Assembly: GCA_964199315.1 (NCBI GenBank)
Contig: OZ116701.1
Span: forward strand, 18,042,001 to 18,106,000
Direction of reading: 5' to 3'
DNA from: Orbicella franksi
Taxonomy: Eukaryota
DNA: 64,000 bases
Positions 1,840 through 11,584 of the stretch are shown piece after piece. The position numbers and the translations under genes are program-made. The notes beneath the pieces are model-generated. The model saw nothing but the letters and a program-made list of their open reading frames with translations, had not been told where the DNA came from and searched no databases. Every line of letters begins with the position of its first letter. The first letter of the stretch is position 1.

Positions 1840-4104
1840 TCCCAGGTGAGCCTCCAAGTAACCTGACAGTTCACAGTGAAAATTCAACCTCTCTTGTTGT
1901 AAGATGGACGCCTGTACCTGAATGCTGTCAATTCGGCATCATTAAAGGTTACCATGTGACCCTGACAAACTCGAACAACTCTTCAGCGATAGTTGCAAAA
2001 TACGTCACCAATTTGGAAGCACGATTCATAAACCTTAAAAACTTTCATGTTTACCAGATTTCCGTAAAGGCATTCACCTCCAAAGGTTCTGGACCTGAGG
2101 TTTCTACATCAGTGTCTACGGATCAGGATGGTATGTTAGTCTTTCTTTTTTTCCTAATTTCCATTCTATTTAATCCCATTTCATTCGTTTAGCATAGTAA
2201 CGCACTAGATCATGCATCTTTTCAAGTCCCCACCCACGCACCACCCACACACTTCCGCTCGTTTTTAGTAACTTATAGCTCATTGGTCGTTAGGAACCAT
2301 TTTGTTCTGAAATAGTACATAAAGACGTCTCGATATGGAGTCTTAATTTAATATTTACTATTTTCCTCAATTTATTTTTCATTCCAGTTCCAGTAGCATC
2401 TCCTGGAAATTTTAGTGGTCATAAAATTAGCCAGACTGCGATCCAGTTATTCTGGACTCCTGTTCACCAAGATAAAGCTAATGGCATCGTGATAGGCTAC
2501 AACGTCTCCTTAAAAGAGGTTGAAGGAAATCAATCTACTAGACACATATATTTTGATAGTTCGAACCTTCAAGCGGTTATAGGTTGGCTTAGACCTTTCA
2601 CAGCATACAAACTTAACGTGAGGGCATTTACCATTAAAGGAAGTGGGCCACCCAGCCCCTTTATCACTGTGGAAACAGGGGAAGAAGGTTGGTAGTAATC
2701 GTTTGTCTCAACATCATAACGTATAGTTAATTGTCAATTTGTTTCAGTCTTCTAATGTTGCCGGGAAATTCACTTTTTTGGATACGCCTGTGGTTTTACT
2801 GTGTTTAGTTTGTTTTGTTCGTCATTTCCGCCACTCTTTCTAGTTTCAAAATATATGTTACGACACCTACCTTTATGTAAAACTATAATTTCATTTTCAC
2901 AATTTAGTAACATCGAAACTTGAAGAAGGCTGGTTTAACCAGCTGAAATATTGTTTTAAATATATTAGATTGGGTCAGCTTTGCAGTAATCTTTGACTTA
3001 TAATCGTTCAGTTACTTCTAGTTTCAAGTTTGGCTAATTATTTCTCCACTGAGATCCAATGTTCAATCAAGCAGGATCTTCGTTCATGGCTTTGCACTTT
3101 ATTTAGTTTGTTTTCTTTATGCAACTTCCCTCTCTTTCTCTTTCTCTTTTTTATGGTTGGTTCTAAGGTTTGCAAACTTTGTCTTTGAAGAATCATCTGT
3201 ATGCATCATGATAAATACATGCTCGTATGTTCCCCTTCTTTACTTACAGCTGGTTGCTTCTCTTCCAGCTTCTCAAGTTCTACCAGGTTCATTTCAGGGC
3301 ATCAATTCAGGCTCTACATCAATTTTGTTGCGCTGGGACCCAATTCCCCAGGATTTAGTCGCCGGAGTCCTAAAACGTTTTTACATTACTTATCGCCAGT
3401 TAGATACCGCTGACAACACCACATACAACATCACAGTACCAATCACGAACGTAACGGTTGAAATAACCAATTTACGAAAATACACCAACTATAGCTTTGA
3501 TATTGAGGAAGTTACGAAGTTCGTTGGAGCAGCGACGGAGCCGATCGTCATCACAACTGGCGAAGACAGTACGTCACACTTTCTTTTGTTTCGTTGTTAG
3601 AATATTACTATGTGAACGCTGATTTTCTGATTTGCAAGTTACGCTCTGTCGAAGTCCCGTCTTCAAGAAATTACTGAGAACGCGTTTTGGTTAGTGAGAT
3701 TACTAGGCAATGTGCTGTAATGCTGTCGTGACTGTAACTTGAGATAGTTTTGGCCCTTGTGACTGCTTGCGCTGCTTTTGTAGAACCAAAACGATTCACA
3801 ATGTTCCCATGAATGTTTAACGGCTAAAAGTCATTAAATCAGCAATCTGAATATATCTTTTTTTGCATTAACCATCCGTGCATTCGATTTCGTCTGCTTT
3901 TACGTCATACGATGATTTTGTCCCTAAACATTACTACCATGTTATTCCTGGCTTGCACTGTCACGCAATAAAAAAGTAATTCGAAAACCAATAAGTGGAT
4001 TAAGTCAAGAAATTGTCATGTTACAGGAGATTGATAAAAAAGACACTTCTCCAAGTTTTAAGACTGTGCGTTTTCCCAAACTTCAGATATTCGTCGAAAT
4101 CTTG

Positions 4105-4139
<35 letters not shown>

Positions 4140-10100: not shown

Positions 10101-11584
10101 TGAGGTCAACAAAATACGTCAGCACGGTCATAATCATCATGGCTTTGTTGTTATTAGCTTGTATCCTGGGAATCATCTATGAACGTCGTCGAAGAAAGAT
10201 CAGCACAGGTAACAAATTCTTTACTGACAATTGTATTGGGATGTGATTTTTCTAACGCTTGGCAATTCATGCTTTTGCAGAAATTAAAACGTAATGCCAC
10301 CTCCTGTATACATATTTTTTACTTCAAGGATATAAATTCAGCATTTAAGAGCATTGACGAGTCCATTACAATCGTGTTGATTTCAGAAGGTACCCATCCG
10401 ATTGGAATTGTTGTTCTAGTAGTCTGCTAGCAGCCGGTTTTTTTCTGTAAGGGTCACTTAGACGAGCGTTCAGTCATCGCGAACGCAAAAGTGCGATATG
10501 GCGGTGGCCGTTTAGGCAAGAAGGCGAGACAAGGGCGGTATGGCTAAGTAGGGAAGAAGGGGCATGCCCATGCCTCGTCCCATTTCCCTTTAGGGTAAAA
10601 CGTCTCGCCTCATAACCCCCGCCAACGCGAGTTTCGAGAGAAAAACAGGCTGCCAGCAGTCTTTTGTTCTAGAAAACAAGCGCTCAATTTATAGCGACAC
10701 TATTTACAATGAAGTTACGATGTTCGTTTATAACTAACCACTTTTTATTTCAAAATACATCCTTGAAAACCTACCTCACTGATCGTGTTCACAAATAGAG
10801 GACTTGCACTGTTATGCGAAGATCACTCTGAAAAATTCACCAGTTTGAGTTCCCAAGACTTCTGAACTGGGTGAAGAAAGCGATTTACGTACAAATCGCT
10901 CAATCCGACCACGTAAAGTTATATCAGTGCTCACAAACACTATTATTATTCACTTGATTACTTAGAGTGCGCAGTCGATGCATGGCGTGGCGTGTGAATC
11001 GCGTGTGCGGTAAGGATGCGCACAAACAATACACGCCAAGGTCGTTAATGTTTGATCAAGTGACGTTAACGTGGTTCTTGTCATTTCGTCATTACAGGAA
11101 CTCGAATGAGCTTCAAAATTTTTCATTGTTTCTTACAGTTTTGAGGCAGAGTAAAGATCTAAAGAAGGAGATGTTGCCTCTTGTGAAAAGTTTCCTCGTG
11201 AGTATCAAGAAAAATGTCGAAGCTTTATCTAAACGGCATCGTCAAGAGAGATGTCACTTGATACAGGTGGAGAGAGAGCGTGACCAAGAAGCAGCCGATG
11301 CAGTGAATAAGTATTACCAAGTACTTAGCTTGCGTGACATTCGACAAGAATGGTCTCGACGTCGGAAGCCTCTCAAAAGTAAAGTGTCGTCATTGAGTAG
11401 CAGGAAATCCTGCAATCCAACGCAGTGGCCCTTTACCGAGACAACTAATCGGGGGTTAACCAATGTTACACTGCCATGGAAGGCCAGCTCTCATCCCTTT
11501 GGGAGAAAGTACGCCTTTGATCCCCTATCTACTCCTGTCACATTGGAGCCCAACGTCCGTGTTGTAGAGGAAACAAAATTGTAG
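1840..11584 (+). CDS. FN3-repeat / GluR0-like ligand-binding-domain K+ channel protein (5' end not found; frameshifted in this sequence, possibly a pseudogene)
   Basis: GT-AG exons: FN3 at 1840-2130, 2388-2687, 3269-3568, 5104-5457, 5843-6142 (all phase 1-1); 6719-7185 (S1-like TTWYPSPPYV...GFIPRIL, then TM1 WPLLLLTSIVMLGVGMIMWIM); 7975-8069 (pore helix EGFWWAFITSTTVG); 8463-8623 (YGDRCPRG, TM2 VFVIAWALCGLVVIAILIGGII); 8730-8796 and 9231-9465 (S2-like ALRNGEVRGALVD); 10052-10208 (TM3 VIIIMALLLLACILGIIY then RRRRK); optional 10799-10912; 11139-11584 (helical tail, stop). Frame breaks at 8485-8489 and about 9407-9420. Confidence 0.8.
3943..4531. mobile_element. MITE-like element (about 590 bp) in intron
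   Basis: TATTCCTGGCTTGCAC at 3943 versus reverse complement of GTGCAACCCAAGAATA ending at 4531 (14/16). Confidence 0.65.
4532..4897. mobile_element. MITE abutting the previous element
   Basis: GGGACCTTACGCATATACGACGGCGACGGCGAG at left versus CTCGTTGCCGTTGCCGTCGTGTTTTGCGTAAGGTCCC at right: about 30-bp imperfect TIR. Confidence 0.75.
7552..7727. mobile_element. MITE with TAGCCTG termini and 9-bp target-site duplication
   Basis: TIR TAGCCTGCAGTGCAGG / CCTACACTGCAGGCTA (15/16); flanks ATGAAGTGA (7543-7551) and ACGAAGTGA (7728-7736). Confidence 0.75.
8096..8414. mobile_element. MITE filling most of the intron that splits the TVG|YGD filter
   Basis: TIR GGTTGTTTAATATTTACC / GGTAAATGGTAAACAACC (16/18). 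Confidence 0.7.
10420..10663. mobile_element. MITE with perfect 9-bp target-site duplication
   Basis: TIR TAGTCTGCTAGCAGCCGGTTTTT / AAAAACAGGCTGCCAGCAGTCTT; TTGTTCTAG at 10411-10419 and 10664-10672. Confidence 0.8.

What the first reader, a model, noticed from the sequence alone, without database searches (positions are those of the whole stretch)
1840..11584. FN3-array receptor fused to a GluR0-like, K+-signature ligand-gated channel
Seen: after splicing, five FN3 domains run in frame into an S1-like segment, TM1, pore helix plus TTVGYGD, TM2, an S2-like segment (ALRNGEVRGALVD), a third TM and a helical tail. Established: S1-TM-P-TM-S2 with a TXVGYG filter is the layout of prokaryotic GluR0 and rotifer AvGluR1, whereas canonical animal iGluRs lack the GYG filter and carry a LIVBP-like N-terminal domain rather than FN3. 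Inference: an animal, intron-rich, inverted-topology K+-selective channel gated by a ligand, or mechanically or adhesively through its FN3 stalk. The ORF track misses the filter because it is split by an intron and read in another frame. I cannot confirm that the family is undescribed.
Basis: partly seen in the sequence, partly recalled or inferred. Interest (0 to 1): 0.9.

Follow-up and report, generated by a model that had tools for sequence, protein, structure and literature searches.

The report
Broken FN3-fused GluR0-like potassium channel gene
This coral gene joins a string of adhesion-type (FN3) domains to a glutamate-receptor-shaped channel that has a potassium-channel pore; that design is shared by many cnidarian genes and no paper I could search describes it, but the copy in this window is broken in two places.

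Summary
Twelve GT-AG exons on the + strand (1840-11584) encode five FN3 domains, S1, TM1, pore helix plus TTVG|YGD (split by an intron), TM2, S2, TM3 and a helical tail. A polyA-RNA contig joins the last FN3 exon to the S1 exon exactly at 6142|6719.

The window copy has two lesions relative to an intact, colinear orthologue (L003) and 15 other coral fragments. One is an extra G in the run at 8485-8489, four codons after GYGD. The other is a 37-nt deletion after 9405 in S2. Four stop codons lie between them. RNA and DNA contigs of the same species label indicate that an intact version exists there.

The gene belongs to a large family found in all the cnidarian classes sampled (sea anemones, stony corals, hydrozoans, a scyphozoan). 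Public records name its members "sidekick", "PTPRQ", "cubilin" or "uncharacterized". In all of them an FN3, CUB-Ig, TSP1 or SEA ectodomain precedes the same module.

A confident AlphaFold model of the module matches iGluR LBD-TMD chains. Its best clamshell match is the GluR0 ligand-binding core (1II5, Z 19.9). By sequence the pore is a K+ channel pore, and the nearest non-cnidarian relatives found are bacterial GluR0-type proteins.

K+ selectivity and ligand gating are inferred, not shown. Seven literature searches found no description of this family.

The parts
1840..2130 (+). FN3 domain 1 exon (phase 1 to phase 1). Its acceptor implies at least one further exon upstream, which I did not identify.
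   Evidence: Pfam fn3 E 3.5e-12; ag|...|gtatgt boundaries; open in the joined reading.
2388..2687 (+). FN3 domain 2 exon. An alternative acceptor 6 nt downstream, at 2394, is also possible.
   Evidence: Pfam fn3; boundaries; open in the joined reading.
3269..3568 (+). FN3 domain 3 exon
   Evidence: Pfam fn3 E 8.4e-10; boundaries.
5104..5457 (+). FN3 domain 4 exon
   Evidence: Pfam fn3 on part of the exon; boundaries; the same exon order FN3-4, FN3-5, S1 in the related contig L001.
5843..6142 (+). FN3 domain 5 exon, spliced to the S1 exon
   Evidence: Pfam fn3 E 2.1e-6. RNA contig X6 record 26 maps 6093-6142 and then 6719-7086 with no letters between.
6719..7185 (+). S1 half of the clamshell (cysteine-rich: TCxC, CCxxC) plus TM1 (about 7123-7185)
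   Evidence: phmmer finds 162 relatives; family HMM positions 14-171, E 2e-38; conservation table; TM-like segment.
7975..8069 (+). Linker after TM1, pore helix, and the first part of the filter (T-T-V and two bases of the G codon)
   Evidence: Sequence; family HMM 172-203, E 4e-14; homologues carry WWAF.TMTT(V/L)GYGDR.
8463..8623 (+). Exon with the rest of the filter (YGD at 8464-8472) and TM2
   Evidence: Sequence; gap-free match of GYGDRCPRGVLSRVF.IAW to the homologues once one G is left out; Ion_trans_2 on the TM2 piece E 0.047.
8485..8489 (+). Lesion 1: a run of five G where the orthologue has four, giving a +1 frameshift four codons after GYGD
   Evidence: Pairwise alignment with L003; regex check in L003 and L004; DNA run X15 holds a contig with one G left out, depth 220 of 492.
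8730..8796 (+). First S2 exon (VAAIANNSDFRLGVLKSARMKS)
   Evidence: Family HMM 251-279; boundaries; same exon in L003.
9231..9465 (+). Main S2 exon (contains ALRNGEVRGALVD and YGVVLAG)
   Evidence: Family HMM 279-345, E 3.5e-19; 28 coral fragments at 53-100% coverage.
9405..9406 (+). Lesion 2: 37 nt missing between these two bases. The missing stretch encodes about HSMKLEKCFKEY, including the family's conserved Cys-Phe. It causes a second frameshift.
   Evidence: Alignment with L003. All 15 aligned coral fragments carry the segment. RNA contigs of X6 and X25 stop matching exactly at 9405. An X15 DNA contig stops matching at 9412 with 28 unmatched letters beyond.
10052..10208 (+). Exon with the end of S2 and TM3 (about 10115-10180), followed by RRRRK
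   Evidence: Family HMM 375-417; RNA contig X25 record 8 stops matching exactly at the donor 10208; TM-like segment.
11139..11584 (+). Cytoplasmic helical tail, ending -ETKL and a stop at 11582-11584
   Evidence: Family HMM 428-482, E 1e-6; open and 91% identical to L003; a long helix continuing from TM3 in the model of a paralogue.

Best explanation
The locus is a coral member of a family that recurs across the cnidarian classes sampled. Each member is a single-pass-ectodomain channel subunit built on the ionotropic-glutamate-receptor plan: an extracellular adhesion-type array (here at least five FN3 domains), then S1, TM1, a re-entrant pore loop carrying the K+ channel signature TTVGYGD, TM2, S2, a third TM, and a cytoplasmic helical tail.

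Shown here:
- the exon structure;
- the FN3-to-S1 splice in RNA;
- the recurrence of the architecture in Anthozoa, Hydrozoa and Scyphozoa;
- the GluR0-like clamshell fold of S1+S2 in a confident model of a paralogue;
- the K+-channel identity of the pore by sequence;
- homology to bacterial GluR0-type proteins across TM1-P-TM2-S2;
- purifying selection between this copy and its orthologue.

Inferred:
- four subunits form an inverted K+-selective pore;
- closure of the extracellular clamshell on an unknown small ligand pulls on TM2 and opens the pore, so that activation hyperpolarises the cell;
- the FN3 array takes the place of the amino-terminal domain of animal iGluRs and anchors or modulates the receptor.

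The copy in this window cannot make that protein. It has a +1 frameshift in the G-run at 8485-8489 and a 37-nt deletion after 9405. With both lesions it ends in S2; with the G-run read as four G it still ends six codons into the TM3 exon. It is therefore a recent pseudogene or a null haplotype, less likely an assembly fault. An intact, transcribed version appears to exist in the same species label.
For: Gene model: 12 exons, all ag/gt. The FN3 exons join without a stop. The spliced RNA contig joins 6142|6719, and an RNA contig stops matching at the donor 10208.

Family: phmmer with the S1 exon gives 162 hits. The long hits carry repeated fn3 (with TSP_1 or SEA in some) plus Ion_trans_2 at 43-52 bits and a weaker Lig_chan match. 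They come from Nematostella, Clytia, Hydractinia, Sanderia, Montipora, Stylophora, Porites, Acropora, Actinostola and Desmophyllum. The ESM Atlas's nearest clusters (54-181 members each) are commonest in Cnidaria. Complete members with a signal peptide and a CUB+Ig ectodomain exist.

Pore: TT(V/L)GYGDR.P is found in 19 retrieved family members. The best PDB sequence hits are K+ channels, E 3e-14.

Clamshell: the AF2 model has mean pLDDT 82. All 50 top Foldseek PDB matches listed are iGluR LBD-TMD chains aligned over 430-480 columns. The best VIA match is 1II5, the GluR0 ligand-binding core: Z 19.9, rmsd 3.0 A, 212 of 221 residues. 2PYY follows at Z 19.8.

Bacterial link: hhalign to an SBP_bac_3+Lig_chan+Ion_trans_2 protein gives probability 99.5 over 175 columns. 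Such proteins are the next hits after the cnidarian ones.

Lesions: alignment to L003. L003 is fully open with the same splice sites. All 15 aligned coral fragments carry the 37-nt segment.

Constraint: Ka/Ks 0.29 at Ks 0.22.
Against: - No current, ligand or selectivity has been measured for any family member that I could find.
- Pfam finds no SBP_bac_3 or Lig_chan-Glu_bd domain in S1 or S2. S1 cannot be aligned to bacterial S1 by sequence.
- No arginine is conserved where amino-acid-binding clamshells hold the ligand's carboxylate: the commonest residue there is K, at 35%. An amino-acid ligand is therefore doubtful.
- The structure was predicted for a Nematostella paralogue about 30% identical to this gene, not for this gene's own product, and as a monomer.
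- RNA support is thin. One low-depth spliced contig, 97% identical to the window, probably comes from the other allele or a close paralogue. Other RNA-library contigs run into introns. A polyA raw-read run of a related species label showed no reads on exons.
- Whether the two lesions are real in the animal was not settled.
Confidence: 0.72

Rival explanations
1. The locus is intact in the animal, and both lesions are faults of this assembly: a homopolymer miscount plus a collapsed or mis-polished stretch. The window would then encode the full protein.
For: Lesion 1 is a homopolymer length change, a classic long-read error, and DNA run X15 holds a GGGG form. The X15 contig covering 9412-10150 at full unique depth continues leftwards with letters unlike the window. 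RNA contigs stop matching at 9405. The other 1000 or so codons are open and under constraint.
Against: A clean 37-nt deletion is not a usual polishing error. X15 need not be the sequenced individual: it holds only 0.89 of the sampled words. Exon depth in X15 is about twice intron depth, and variant contigs exist, so the intact reads may come from a second haplotype or a close paralogue.
Confidence: 0.25
2. The family's clamshell is a structural relic that binds no small ligand. The channel would be gated or tethered through its adhesion-type ectodomain (by cell contact, matrix or force), or it would be a constitutive K+ leak placed at contact sites.
For: No arginine is conserved at the canonical ligand-carboxylate position. 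S1 carries four conserved cysteines (a fifth in about three-quarters of members) that could lock it. The ectodomains are very large and varied: FN3 arrays in proteins of up to about 4000 residues, plus TSP1, SEA, F5/8C and CUB-Ig. Some members end in a PDZ-ligand-like C-terminus.
Against: The clamshell fold is kept at high model confidence in both lobes. The S2 acidic residue in ..L(I/V)D(A/S)Y.. and the Ser in NS.E, which align with ligand-contacting positions of bacterial relatives, are nearly invariant. Animal iGluRs also carry large N-terminal domains and are still ligand gated (general knowledge).
Confidence: 0.3
3. The proteins are adhesion or signalling receptors whose pore no longer conducts, or conducts cations without selecting K+.
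For: A TXVGYG motif is also boxed for the animal receptor AvGluR1 (PMC3483616), so the motif by itself does not prove K+ selectivity. Some members have altered filters, for example SQGFGD in a Clytia protein and MRVGYGD in a Hydractinia protein.
Against: Most members keep the full pore-helix and filter signature WWAF.TMTT(V/L)GYGDR.P, which scores as a K+ channel at E 1e-13 to 1e-14. The pore exon shows the lowest Ka/Ks of all segments, 0.17.
Confidence: 0.15
4. The FN3 exons and the channel exons are two neighbouring genes that only appear to join.
For: No RNA molecule spanning all exons was seen. The 5' end is missing.
Against: The spliced RNA contig joins 6142|6719. Splice phases match. The same order FN3-4, FN3-5, S1 is found in related contigs. 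The same fusion occurs in dozens of annotated cnidarian proteins.
Confidence: 0.03

Closest known systems
GluR0, the prokaryotic K+-selective glutamate receptor (Synechocystis, Nostoc), and its bacterial relatives annotated SBP_bac_3 + Lig_chan + Ion_trans_2
   Same: - Same order S1-TM-P-TM-S2.
- TXVGYGD filter.
- The clamshell of the model superposes best on the GluR0 ligand-binding cores 1II5 and 2PYY (Z 19.9 and 19.8).
- hhalign probability 99.5 over TM1-P-TM2-S2, including the ...N.E.F... motif after TM1 and GYGDR.P....R.
- These proteins are the nearest non-cnidarian sequence relatives found.
   Different: - GluR0 has no N-terminal domain and no third TM (bioRxiv 10.1101/2021.01.27.428399). 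This family has large FN3 or CUB-Ig ectodomains, a third TM and a long helical tail.
- S1 is cysteine-rich and not alignable by sequence.
- There is no Pfam SBP_bac_3 hit.
- It is an intron-rich animal gene.
Animal ionotropic glutamate receptors (AMPA, kainate, NMDA, delta, epsilon)
   Same: Whole-module fold: all 50 top Foldseek matches listed are iGluR LBD-TMD chains aligned over 430-480 columns. The module has the third TM after S2 and a large extracellular N-terminal extension.
   Different: - The pore has GYGD rather than the Q/R/N-site loop.
- TM2 has no SYTANLAA motif (the motif is described in PMC3483616).
- There is no LIVBP-like amino-terminal domain.
- Lig_chan scores mostly fall below Pfam's cut-off.
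- The metazoan iGluR survey in eLife 2018 contains none of the words 'potassium', 'GluR0' or 'fibronectin'.
AvGluR1 of the rotifer Adineta vaga
   Same: It is an animal iGluR-type subunit for which a TXVGYG motif is reported (PMC3483616). It is regarded as a stage between bacterial and eukaryotic receptors.
   Different: I did not compare it directly, because no AvGluR1 sequence was available through the tools. Its structure 4IO3 did not stand out among the top rows. From my own knowledge it has a conventional amino-terminal domain, not FN3.
Tetrameric K+ channels (KvAP, Kv1-4, Kv7, MlotiK, LmK)
   Same: Best sequence matches for pore helix, filter and inner helix, E 3e-14 to 1e-9. Pfam Ion_trans_2 is above its cut-off in family members.
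   Different: The pore lies between two extracellular half-domains that follow a signal peptide and an ectodomain, so it must sit inverted in the membrane. There is no voltage sensor.

Membership tests
iGluR superfamily (architecture) | Two-lobed periplasmic-binding-protein-type ligand-binding domain made of S1 and S2, interrupted by the pore | tested here: met
   AF2 model of the paralogue module has pLDDT 82. VIA Z 19.9 to 1II5 over model residues 5-353, which span the pore insertion. Tested on a paralogue, not on this gene's own product.
iGluR superfamily (architecture) | Inverted pore loop, with S1 and S2 outside the cell | tested here: inconclusive
   This follows from signal peptides plus CUB/Ig/FN3 ectodomains directly before S1, conserved cysteines and N-glycosylation sequons in S1 and S2, and RRRRK after TM3. 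There is no experimental topology.
iGluR superfamily (architecture) | Third transmembrane helix (M4) after S2 | tested here: met
   TM-like segment at 10115-10180 and in all aligned members.
Animal iGluRs (AKDF, NMDA, epsilon, lambda) | SYTANLAA motif in the inner helix | tested here: not met
   The TM2 consensus is R.FAI.W.L.GLV...I..G..T.SLT.
Animal iGluRs (AKDF, NMDA, epsilon, lambda) | LIVBP-like amino-terminal domain | tested here: not met
   Only fn3, TSP_1, SEA, CUB and Ig are found before S1.
Animal iGluRs (AKDF, NMDA, epsilon, lambda) | Pfam Lig_chan (PF00060) above its gathering score | tested here: inconclusive
   Scores are 18-34 bits against a cut-off of 30.8. Only one of eight members passes.
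GluR0-type prokaryotic receptors | K+ channel signature TXVGYG in the pore loop | tested here: met
   TTVG|YGD at 8059-8069 and 8463-8472, and across the family.
GluR0-type prokaryotic receptors | Minimal layout: no N-terminal domain and no third TM | tested here: not met
   At least five FN3 domains, TM3 and a tail are present. The feature is stated.
GluR0-type prokaryotic receptors | SBP_bac_3 / Lig_chan-Glu_bd sequence signature in the ligand-binding domain | tested here: not met
   No such Pfam hit down to E = 1 on the window pieces and E = 0.01 on homologues. The bacterial relatives do carry these signatures.
GluR0-type prokaryotic receptors | Activation by amino acids and K+ selectivity | not testable with these tools
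   This needs electrophysiology. The canonical ligand-binding arginine is not conserved. The S2 Asp is nearly invariant.
K+ channel pore (Pfam Ion_trans_2) | Ion_trans_2 above its gathering score | tested here: met
   Scores are 27.7-51.9 bits against a cut-off of 22.5 in seven of eight homologues. In the window the domain is split over three exons, so the pieces score low.

The most novel reading that the evidence does not exclude
Cnidarians would have a large, so far undescribed class of K+-selective receptor channels built on the iGluR plan: a GluR0-type pore and clamshell, plus the eukaryotic third TM, plus adhesion-type ectodomains. These would act as inhibitory (hyperpolarising) ionotropic receptors for an unknown ligand, or for cell or matrix contact. 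They would also be a living intermediate between bacterial GluR0 and animal glutamate receptors.
Probability: 0.4. Interest if true: 0.85.

Novelty: new variant of a known kind. Interest (0 to 1): 0.62.

Why it matters
Animal glutamate receptors are thought to descend from a fusion of a bacterial binding protein with an inverted K+ channel. Among the receptors named in the papers I read, only bacterial GluR0 and the rotifer AvGluR1 are shown with the K+ channel filter.

A family spread across Cnidaria that keeps the full K+ filter, has already gained the third TM, and carries FN3 or CUB-Ig arrays instead of the usual amino-terminal domain would add a new branch to that history. It would also point to a fast inhibitory K+ conductance gated from outside the cell in animals with simple nervous systems.

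These genes are already in public proteomes under misleading names (sidekick, PTPRQ, cubilin, contactin, tyrosine phosphatase S). Renaming them and expressing one is a cheap and direct test.

For this genome's annotation, the practical point is that the copy in the window is broken and should not be taken as the functional allele without resequencing.

Tried and rejected
- **Reading without a frameshift.** I tried TTVG followed directly by VMVTAAQEG. That needs an intron starting TG and loses YGD, and the homologues align gap-free only to the GGGG reading. Rejected.
- **A missing A in the AAAA run at 9423-9426 as the second frame problem.** Rejected. Alignment with L003 and 15 coral fragments shows a 37-nt deletion after 9405 instead.
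- **A hidden exon between 9466 and 10051.** The family HMM finds nothing there.
- **A second copy in the window.** None found.
- **RNA evidence for the pore-region introns.** Neither read-laying run showed those joints. Several RNA-library contigs run through introns, which points to unspliced RNA or DNA carry-over.
- **DNA of the syntenic contig carrying P0178.** P0182 is not on record.
- **Sequence searches for S1 and S2.** S2 of a paralogue finds nothing in the PDB by sequence. S1 does not align to bacterial S1 by hhalign.
- **Bacterial genomes.** A scan with a single paralogue fragment found nothing, because the patterns were too specific.
- **Full-length annotated orthologue of this particular gene.** Not found. 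All long proteins retrieved are paralogues at about 30-36% identity.
- **Literature.** Seven searches and five papers read turned up no description of the family. The library covers open-access papers and preprints only.
- **This genome's earlier scan notes.** Nothing on this gene.

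
Full report
**What is in the window.**
The window is coral DNA: public runs holding it are labelled coral or coral metagenome. On the + strand between 1840 and 11584 there are twelve exons with canonical ag/gt boundaries.

- Five exons are FN3 domains: 1840-2130, 2388-2687, 3269-3568, 5104-5457 and 5843-6142. Each is phase 1 at both ends, each is recognised by Pfam fn3 on the pieces scanned, and they join without a stop.
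- The fifth FN3 exon ends GGA T|gtaagt. The next exon starts cag|CG ACG TGT, so the reading continues ..KDG-S-TCNCP.. into exon 6719-7185.
- Exon 6719-7185 has no Pfam match. It has 162 relatives by phmmer and ends in a hydrophobic helix.
- Exon 7975-8069 encodes the linker, the pore helix and T-T-V plus two bases of a glycine codon.
- Further exons are 8730-8796 and 9231-9465 (S2, including ALRNGEVRGALVD), 10052-10208 (a third hydrophobic helix followed by RRRRK) and 11139-11584 (a helical tail ending in a stop).
- A profile built from 14 homologous modules hits these exons in order and nothing else in the interval.

**One gene, not two.**
A 418-nt contig from a polyA RNA-seq run (X6, record 26) maps with its first 50 letters to 6093-6142 and the remaining 368 to 6719-7086, with nothing between. 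That is exactly the predicted FN3-to-S1 splice. Another RNA contig stops matching exactly at the donor 10208.

The spliced contig is 97% identical to the window, and its variants also occur in DNA run X15. It probably comes from the other allele or a very close paralogue. It therefore shows the splice, not expression of this exact copy.

Related coral contigs keep the same exon order (L001: FN3-4, FN3-5, S1). One shows the same neighbourhood, with an Ion_trans gene on the opposite strand downstream. That contig also lists two more fn3-hitting ORFs further upstream, so five FN3 domains is probably a lower bound. The first exon seen here has an acceptor, so the 5' end is missing.

**The copy in the window is broken.**
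A 12.3-kb metagenome contig (L003, with its near-twin L004) is colinear with 5635-11700 at 75-88% identity, introns included. It is the orthologue in a related coral. With splice sites at the same positions, it gives an uninterrupted 654-residue reading from FN3-5 to the stop. Against it the window shows two lesions.

- **Lesion 1.** CCCAAGAGGGGGTG in the window versus CCCAAGAGGGGTG in L003: one extra G in the run 8485-8489, four codons after GYGD. With four G the window reads GYGDRCPRGVLSRVFVIAW.., which aligns without gaps to homologues such as GYGDRSPRSVPARMFGIAW. With five G it reads nonsense.
- **Lesion 2.** After 9405 the window lacks 37 nt, which in L003 and in all 15 other aligned coral fragments encode about HSMKLEKCFKEY.

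The two changes sum to -36 nt, so TM3 and the tail are back in frame. However, TM2 and nearly all of S2 are misread, and four stops fall in that stretch. If the G-run were really four G, the deletion alone would end the protein six codons into the TM3 exon.

**Are the lesions real?**
Three observations point to an intact version in the same species label. DNA run X15 contains a contig with one G fewer (depth 220 of 492). Its contig for 9412-10150 continues leftwards with letters unlike the window. RNA contigs of two runs stop matching exactly at 9405.

The rest of the gene is well kept: Ka/Ks against L003 is 0.29 at Ks 0.22, and lowest in the pore exon at 0.17.

**The family.**
The long phmmer hits are annotated proteins of Nematostella (at least ten loci, 673 to over 4000 residues), Clytia, Hydractinia, Sanderia, Montipora and Stylophora. 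Further searches added Acropora, Porites, Actinostola and Desmophyllum.

Their source names are "sidekick-1", "PTPRQ", "contactin-3-like", "Cubilin", "receptor-type tyrosine-protein phosphatase S-like" or "uncharacterized". Pfam sees fn3 repeats (or TSP_1, SEA, CUB, Ig) followed by Ion_trans_2 at 28-52 bits and a weaker Lig_chan match.

Two complete members start with a signal peptide, then CUB and Ig, then the module. The ESM Atlas's nearest clusters, of 54-181 members each, are commonest in Cnidaria.

The module's conserved features are:
- TCxC, PPY, CCxxC, FP and SPG in S1;
- WP in TM1;
- N..(E/Q)FP.SF after TM1;
- WWAF.TMTT(V/L)GYGDR.P in the pore;
- LYGTK, NS.E and L(I/V)D(A/S)Y in S2;
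- YGVVL...CF, a third TM, and a tail with a conserved E(L/M)R...F...L...H pattern.

**What the module is.**
By sequence against the PDB, the profile hits only K+ channels at the top: LmK, KvAP, Kv4, Kv1 and Kv7, at E 3e-14 to 1e-9, over pore helix, filter and inner helix.

A profile-profile comparison with a bacterial protein carrying SBP_bac_3, Lig_chan-Glu_bd, Lig_chan and Ion_trans_2 (that is, GluR0-type) gives probability 99.5 over 175 columns, running from TM1 through the pore into S2. Such proteins are the next hits after the cnidarian ones.

An AlphaFold2 model of a Nematostella module, built with a 20-row alignment, has mean pLDDT 82 and over 90 through most of S1, the membrane part and S2.

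- Foldseek against the PDB returns iGluR LBD-TMD chains in every one of the 50 rows listed, aligned over 430-480 columns. The same is true of Swiss-Prot models.
- The second-look aligner ranks the GluR0 ligand-binding core first: 1II5 at Z 19.9, rmsd 3.0 A, 212 of 221 residues, over model residues 5-353, which span the pore insertion. Nostoc GluR0 (2PYY) follows at Z 19.8, then glutamine- and other amino-acid-binding proteins.

Topology is inferred. The ectodomain follows a signal peptide and S1 follows it directly, so TM1 must run outside-in and the pore loop must enter from the cytoplasmic side, as in GluR0 and iGluRs. The basic cluster after TM3 fits a cytoplasmic tail.

**How it probably works, and what is uncertain.**
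The best reading is a tetrameric, inverted, K+-selective pore opened by closure of the extracellular clamshell, with the FN3 array in the place of the iGluR amino-terminal domain. Activation would drive the membrane towards the K+ equilibrium potential.

In favour of a working cleft:
- the fold is kept in both lobes;
- the acidic residue of ..LIDAY.. is nearly invariant, and it aligns with the ..VVFD.. motif of the bacterial relative;
- the Ser of NS.E aligns with the GST motif of the bacterial relative.

Against a standard amino-acid ligand:
- no arginine is conserved where such clamshells hold the carboxylate (K 35%, M 13%, S 13% at that place);
- S1 is cysteine-rich and not alignable to bacterial S1.

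The ligand, if there is one, is therefore unknown. Gating or tethering through the ectodomain remains a serious rival. Some members have altered filters. A few, including this gene (-ETKL; -ETRL in L003), end in a motif that looks like a class I PDZ ligand. That reading is mine.

**Comparison with what is known.**
GluR0 has the same S1-TM-P-TM-S2 order and K+ filter, but lacks an N-terminal domain and the third TM. Animal iGluRs have the third TM and an N-terminal domain, but that domain is LIVBP-like, their inner helix carries SYTANLAA, and they lack GYG. This family has neither SYTANLAA nor an LIVBP domain. AvGluR1 is the one animal receptor named in the papers I read for which TXVGYG is reported; I could not compare it directly.

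The family works like, and is homologous to, GluR0-type channels. It fails the minimal-layout and sequence-signature tests for membership, and it also fails two defining tests for the animal iGluR classes. I file it as a new variant within the iGluR/GluR0 superfamily.

**Novelty.**
Seven full-text searches found no paper on such proteins. The 2018 metazoan iGluR survey contains none of the words potassium, GluR0 or fibronectin. A September 2026 paper on cnidarian and other iGluRs does not mention the family either.

The library holds open-access papers and preprints only, so absence is not proof. The proteins themselves are in public databases under misleading names.

**Verdict.**
The specific copy is broken. 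Function is inferred.

Noticed in passing
window 13680-26200, minus strand: A voltage-gated sodium/calcium-type channel gene lies tail to tail with this gene. ORF 13680-14501 reads like domain IV S6 and the C-terminal region. The syntenic contig of a related coral also has Ion_trans ORFs there, and a PAX-hitting ORF beyond them.
   Followed up: no
window 7184-7354, 7526-7696, 8039-8551, 10433-10774 (introns): These stretches have very high summed depth in a DNA run (up to about 22,000 against about 130 for unique sequence) and many short skipping joints. They are interspersed repeats sitting in the introns around the pore exons.
   Followed up: no
window 8485-8489 and 9405/9406: The two lesions (+1 and -37) sum to -36 nt, so the frame is restored downstream. 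This has a one-in-three chance of arising by accident, and it does not rescue the protein, because four stops lie between the lesions.
   Followed up: yes
P0036 (Montipora capricornis XP_068752747.1), residues about 720-740: This annotated paralogue reads WWSSGNWDGAPLSYKGRLF where the family has WW.F.TMTTVGYGDR.P. The public gene model is probably mis-spliced at the intron that splits TTVG|YGD.
   Followed up: partly
P0206 (Acropora cervicornis 'Cubilin', 732 aa) and P0147 (767 aa): This sub-family has the same channel module behind a signal peptide, one CUB domain and one Ig domain instead of FN3. The module is therefore combined with different adhesion-type ectodomains.
   Followed up: partly
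AlphaFold DB cluster hit A0A7I8VUK0 (DgyrCDS8581, 669 aa): This protein is not among the cnidarian hits; I recognise the name prefix as the annelid Dimorphilus (the tool did not show the organism). It matches model residues 10-352 at E 1e-17 and TM 0.50. Algal and protist iGluR-like proteins follow. Relatives of the module may exist outside Cnidaria.
   Followed up: no
window 11570-11584; L003 6221-6235: The protein ends -ETKL (-ETRL in the orthologue), which looks like a class I PDZ-binding motif. Some paralogues end -SIL, -TTV or -TGF.
   Followed up: no
P0062/P0161 (JGI metagenome contigs) and P0147 (ENA contigs): Family members of 715-1016 residues are encoded as uninterrupted ORFs on contigs of 2.6-4.4 kb. 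These are probably transcripts in metatranscriptome assemblies rather than intronless genes.
   Followed up: no
window 6719-7185 versus the family: This orthologue group departs from the family consensus at several strongly conserved S1 positions: F to V before the invariant P, G to V two residues after it, and SPG to SSG. L003 has the same changes, so they are lineage-specific and not a result of the gene's decay.
   Followed up: partly
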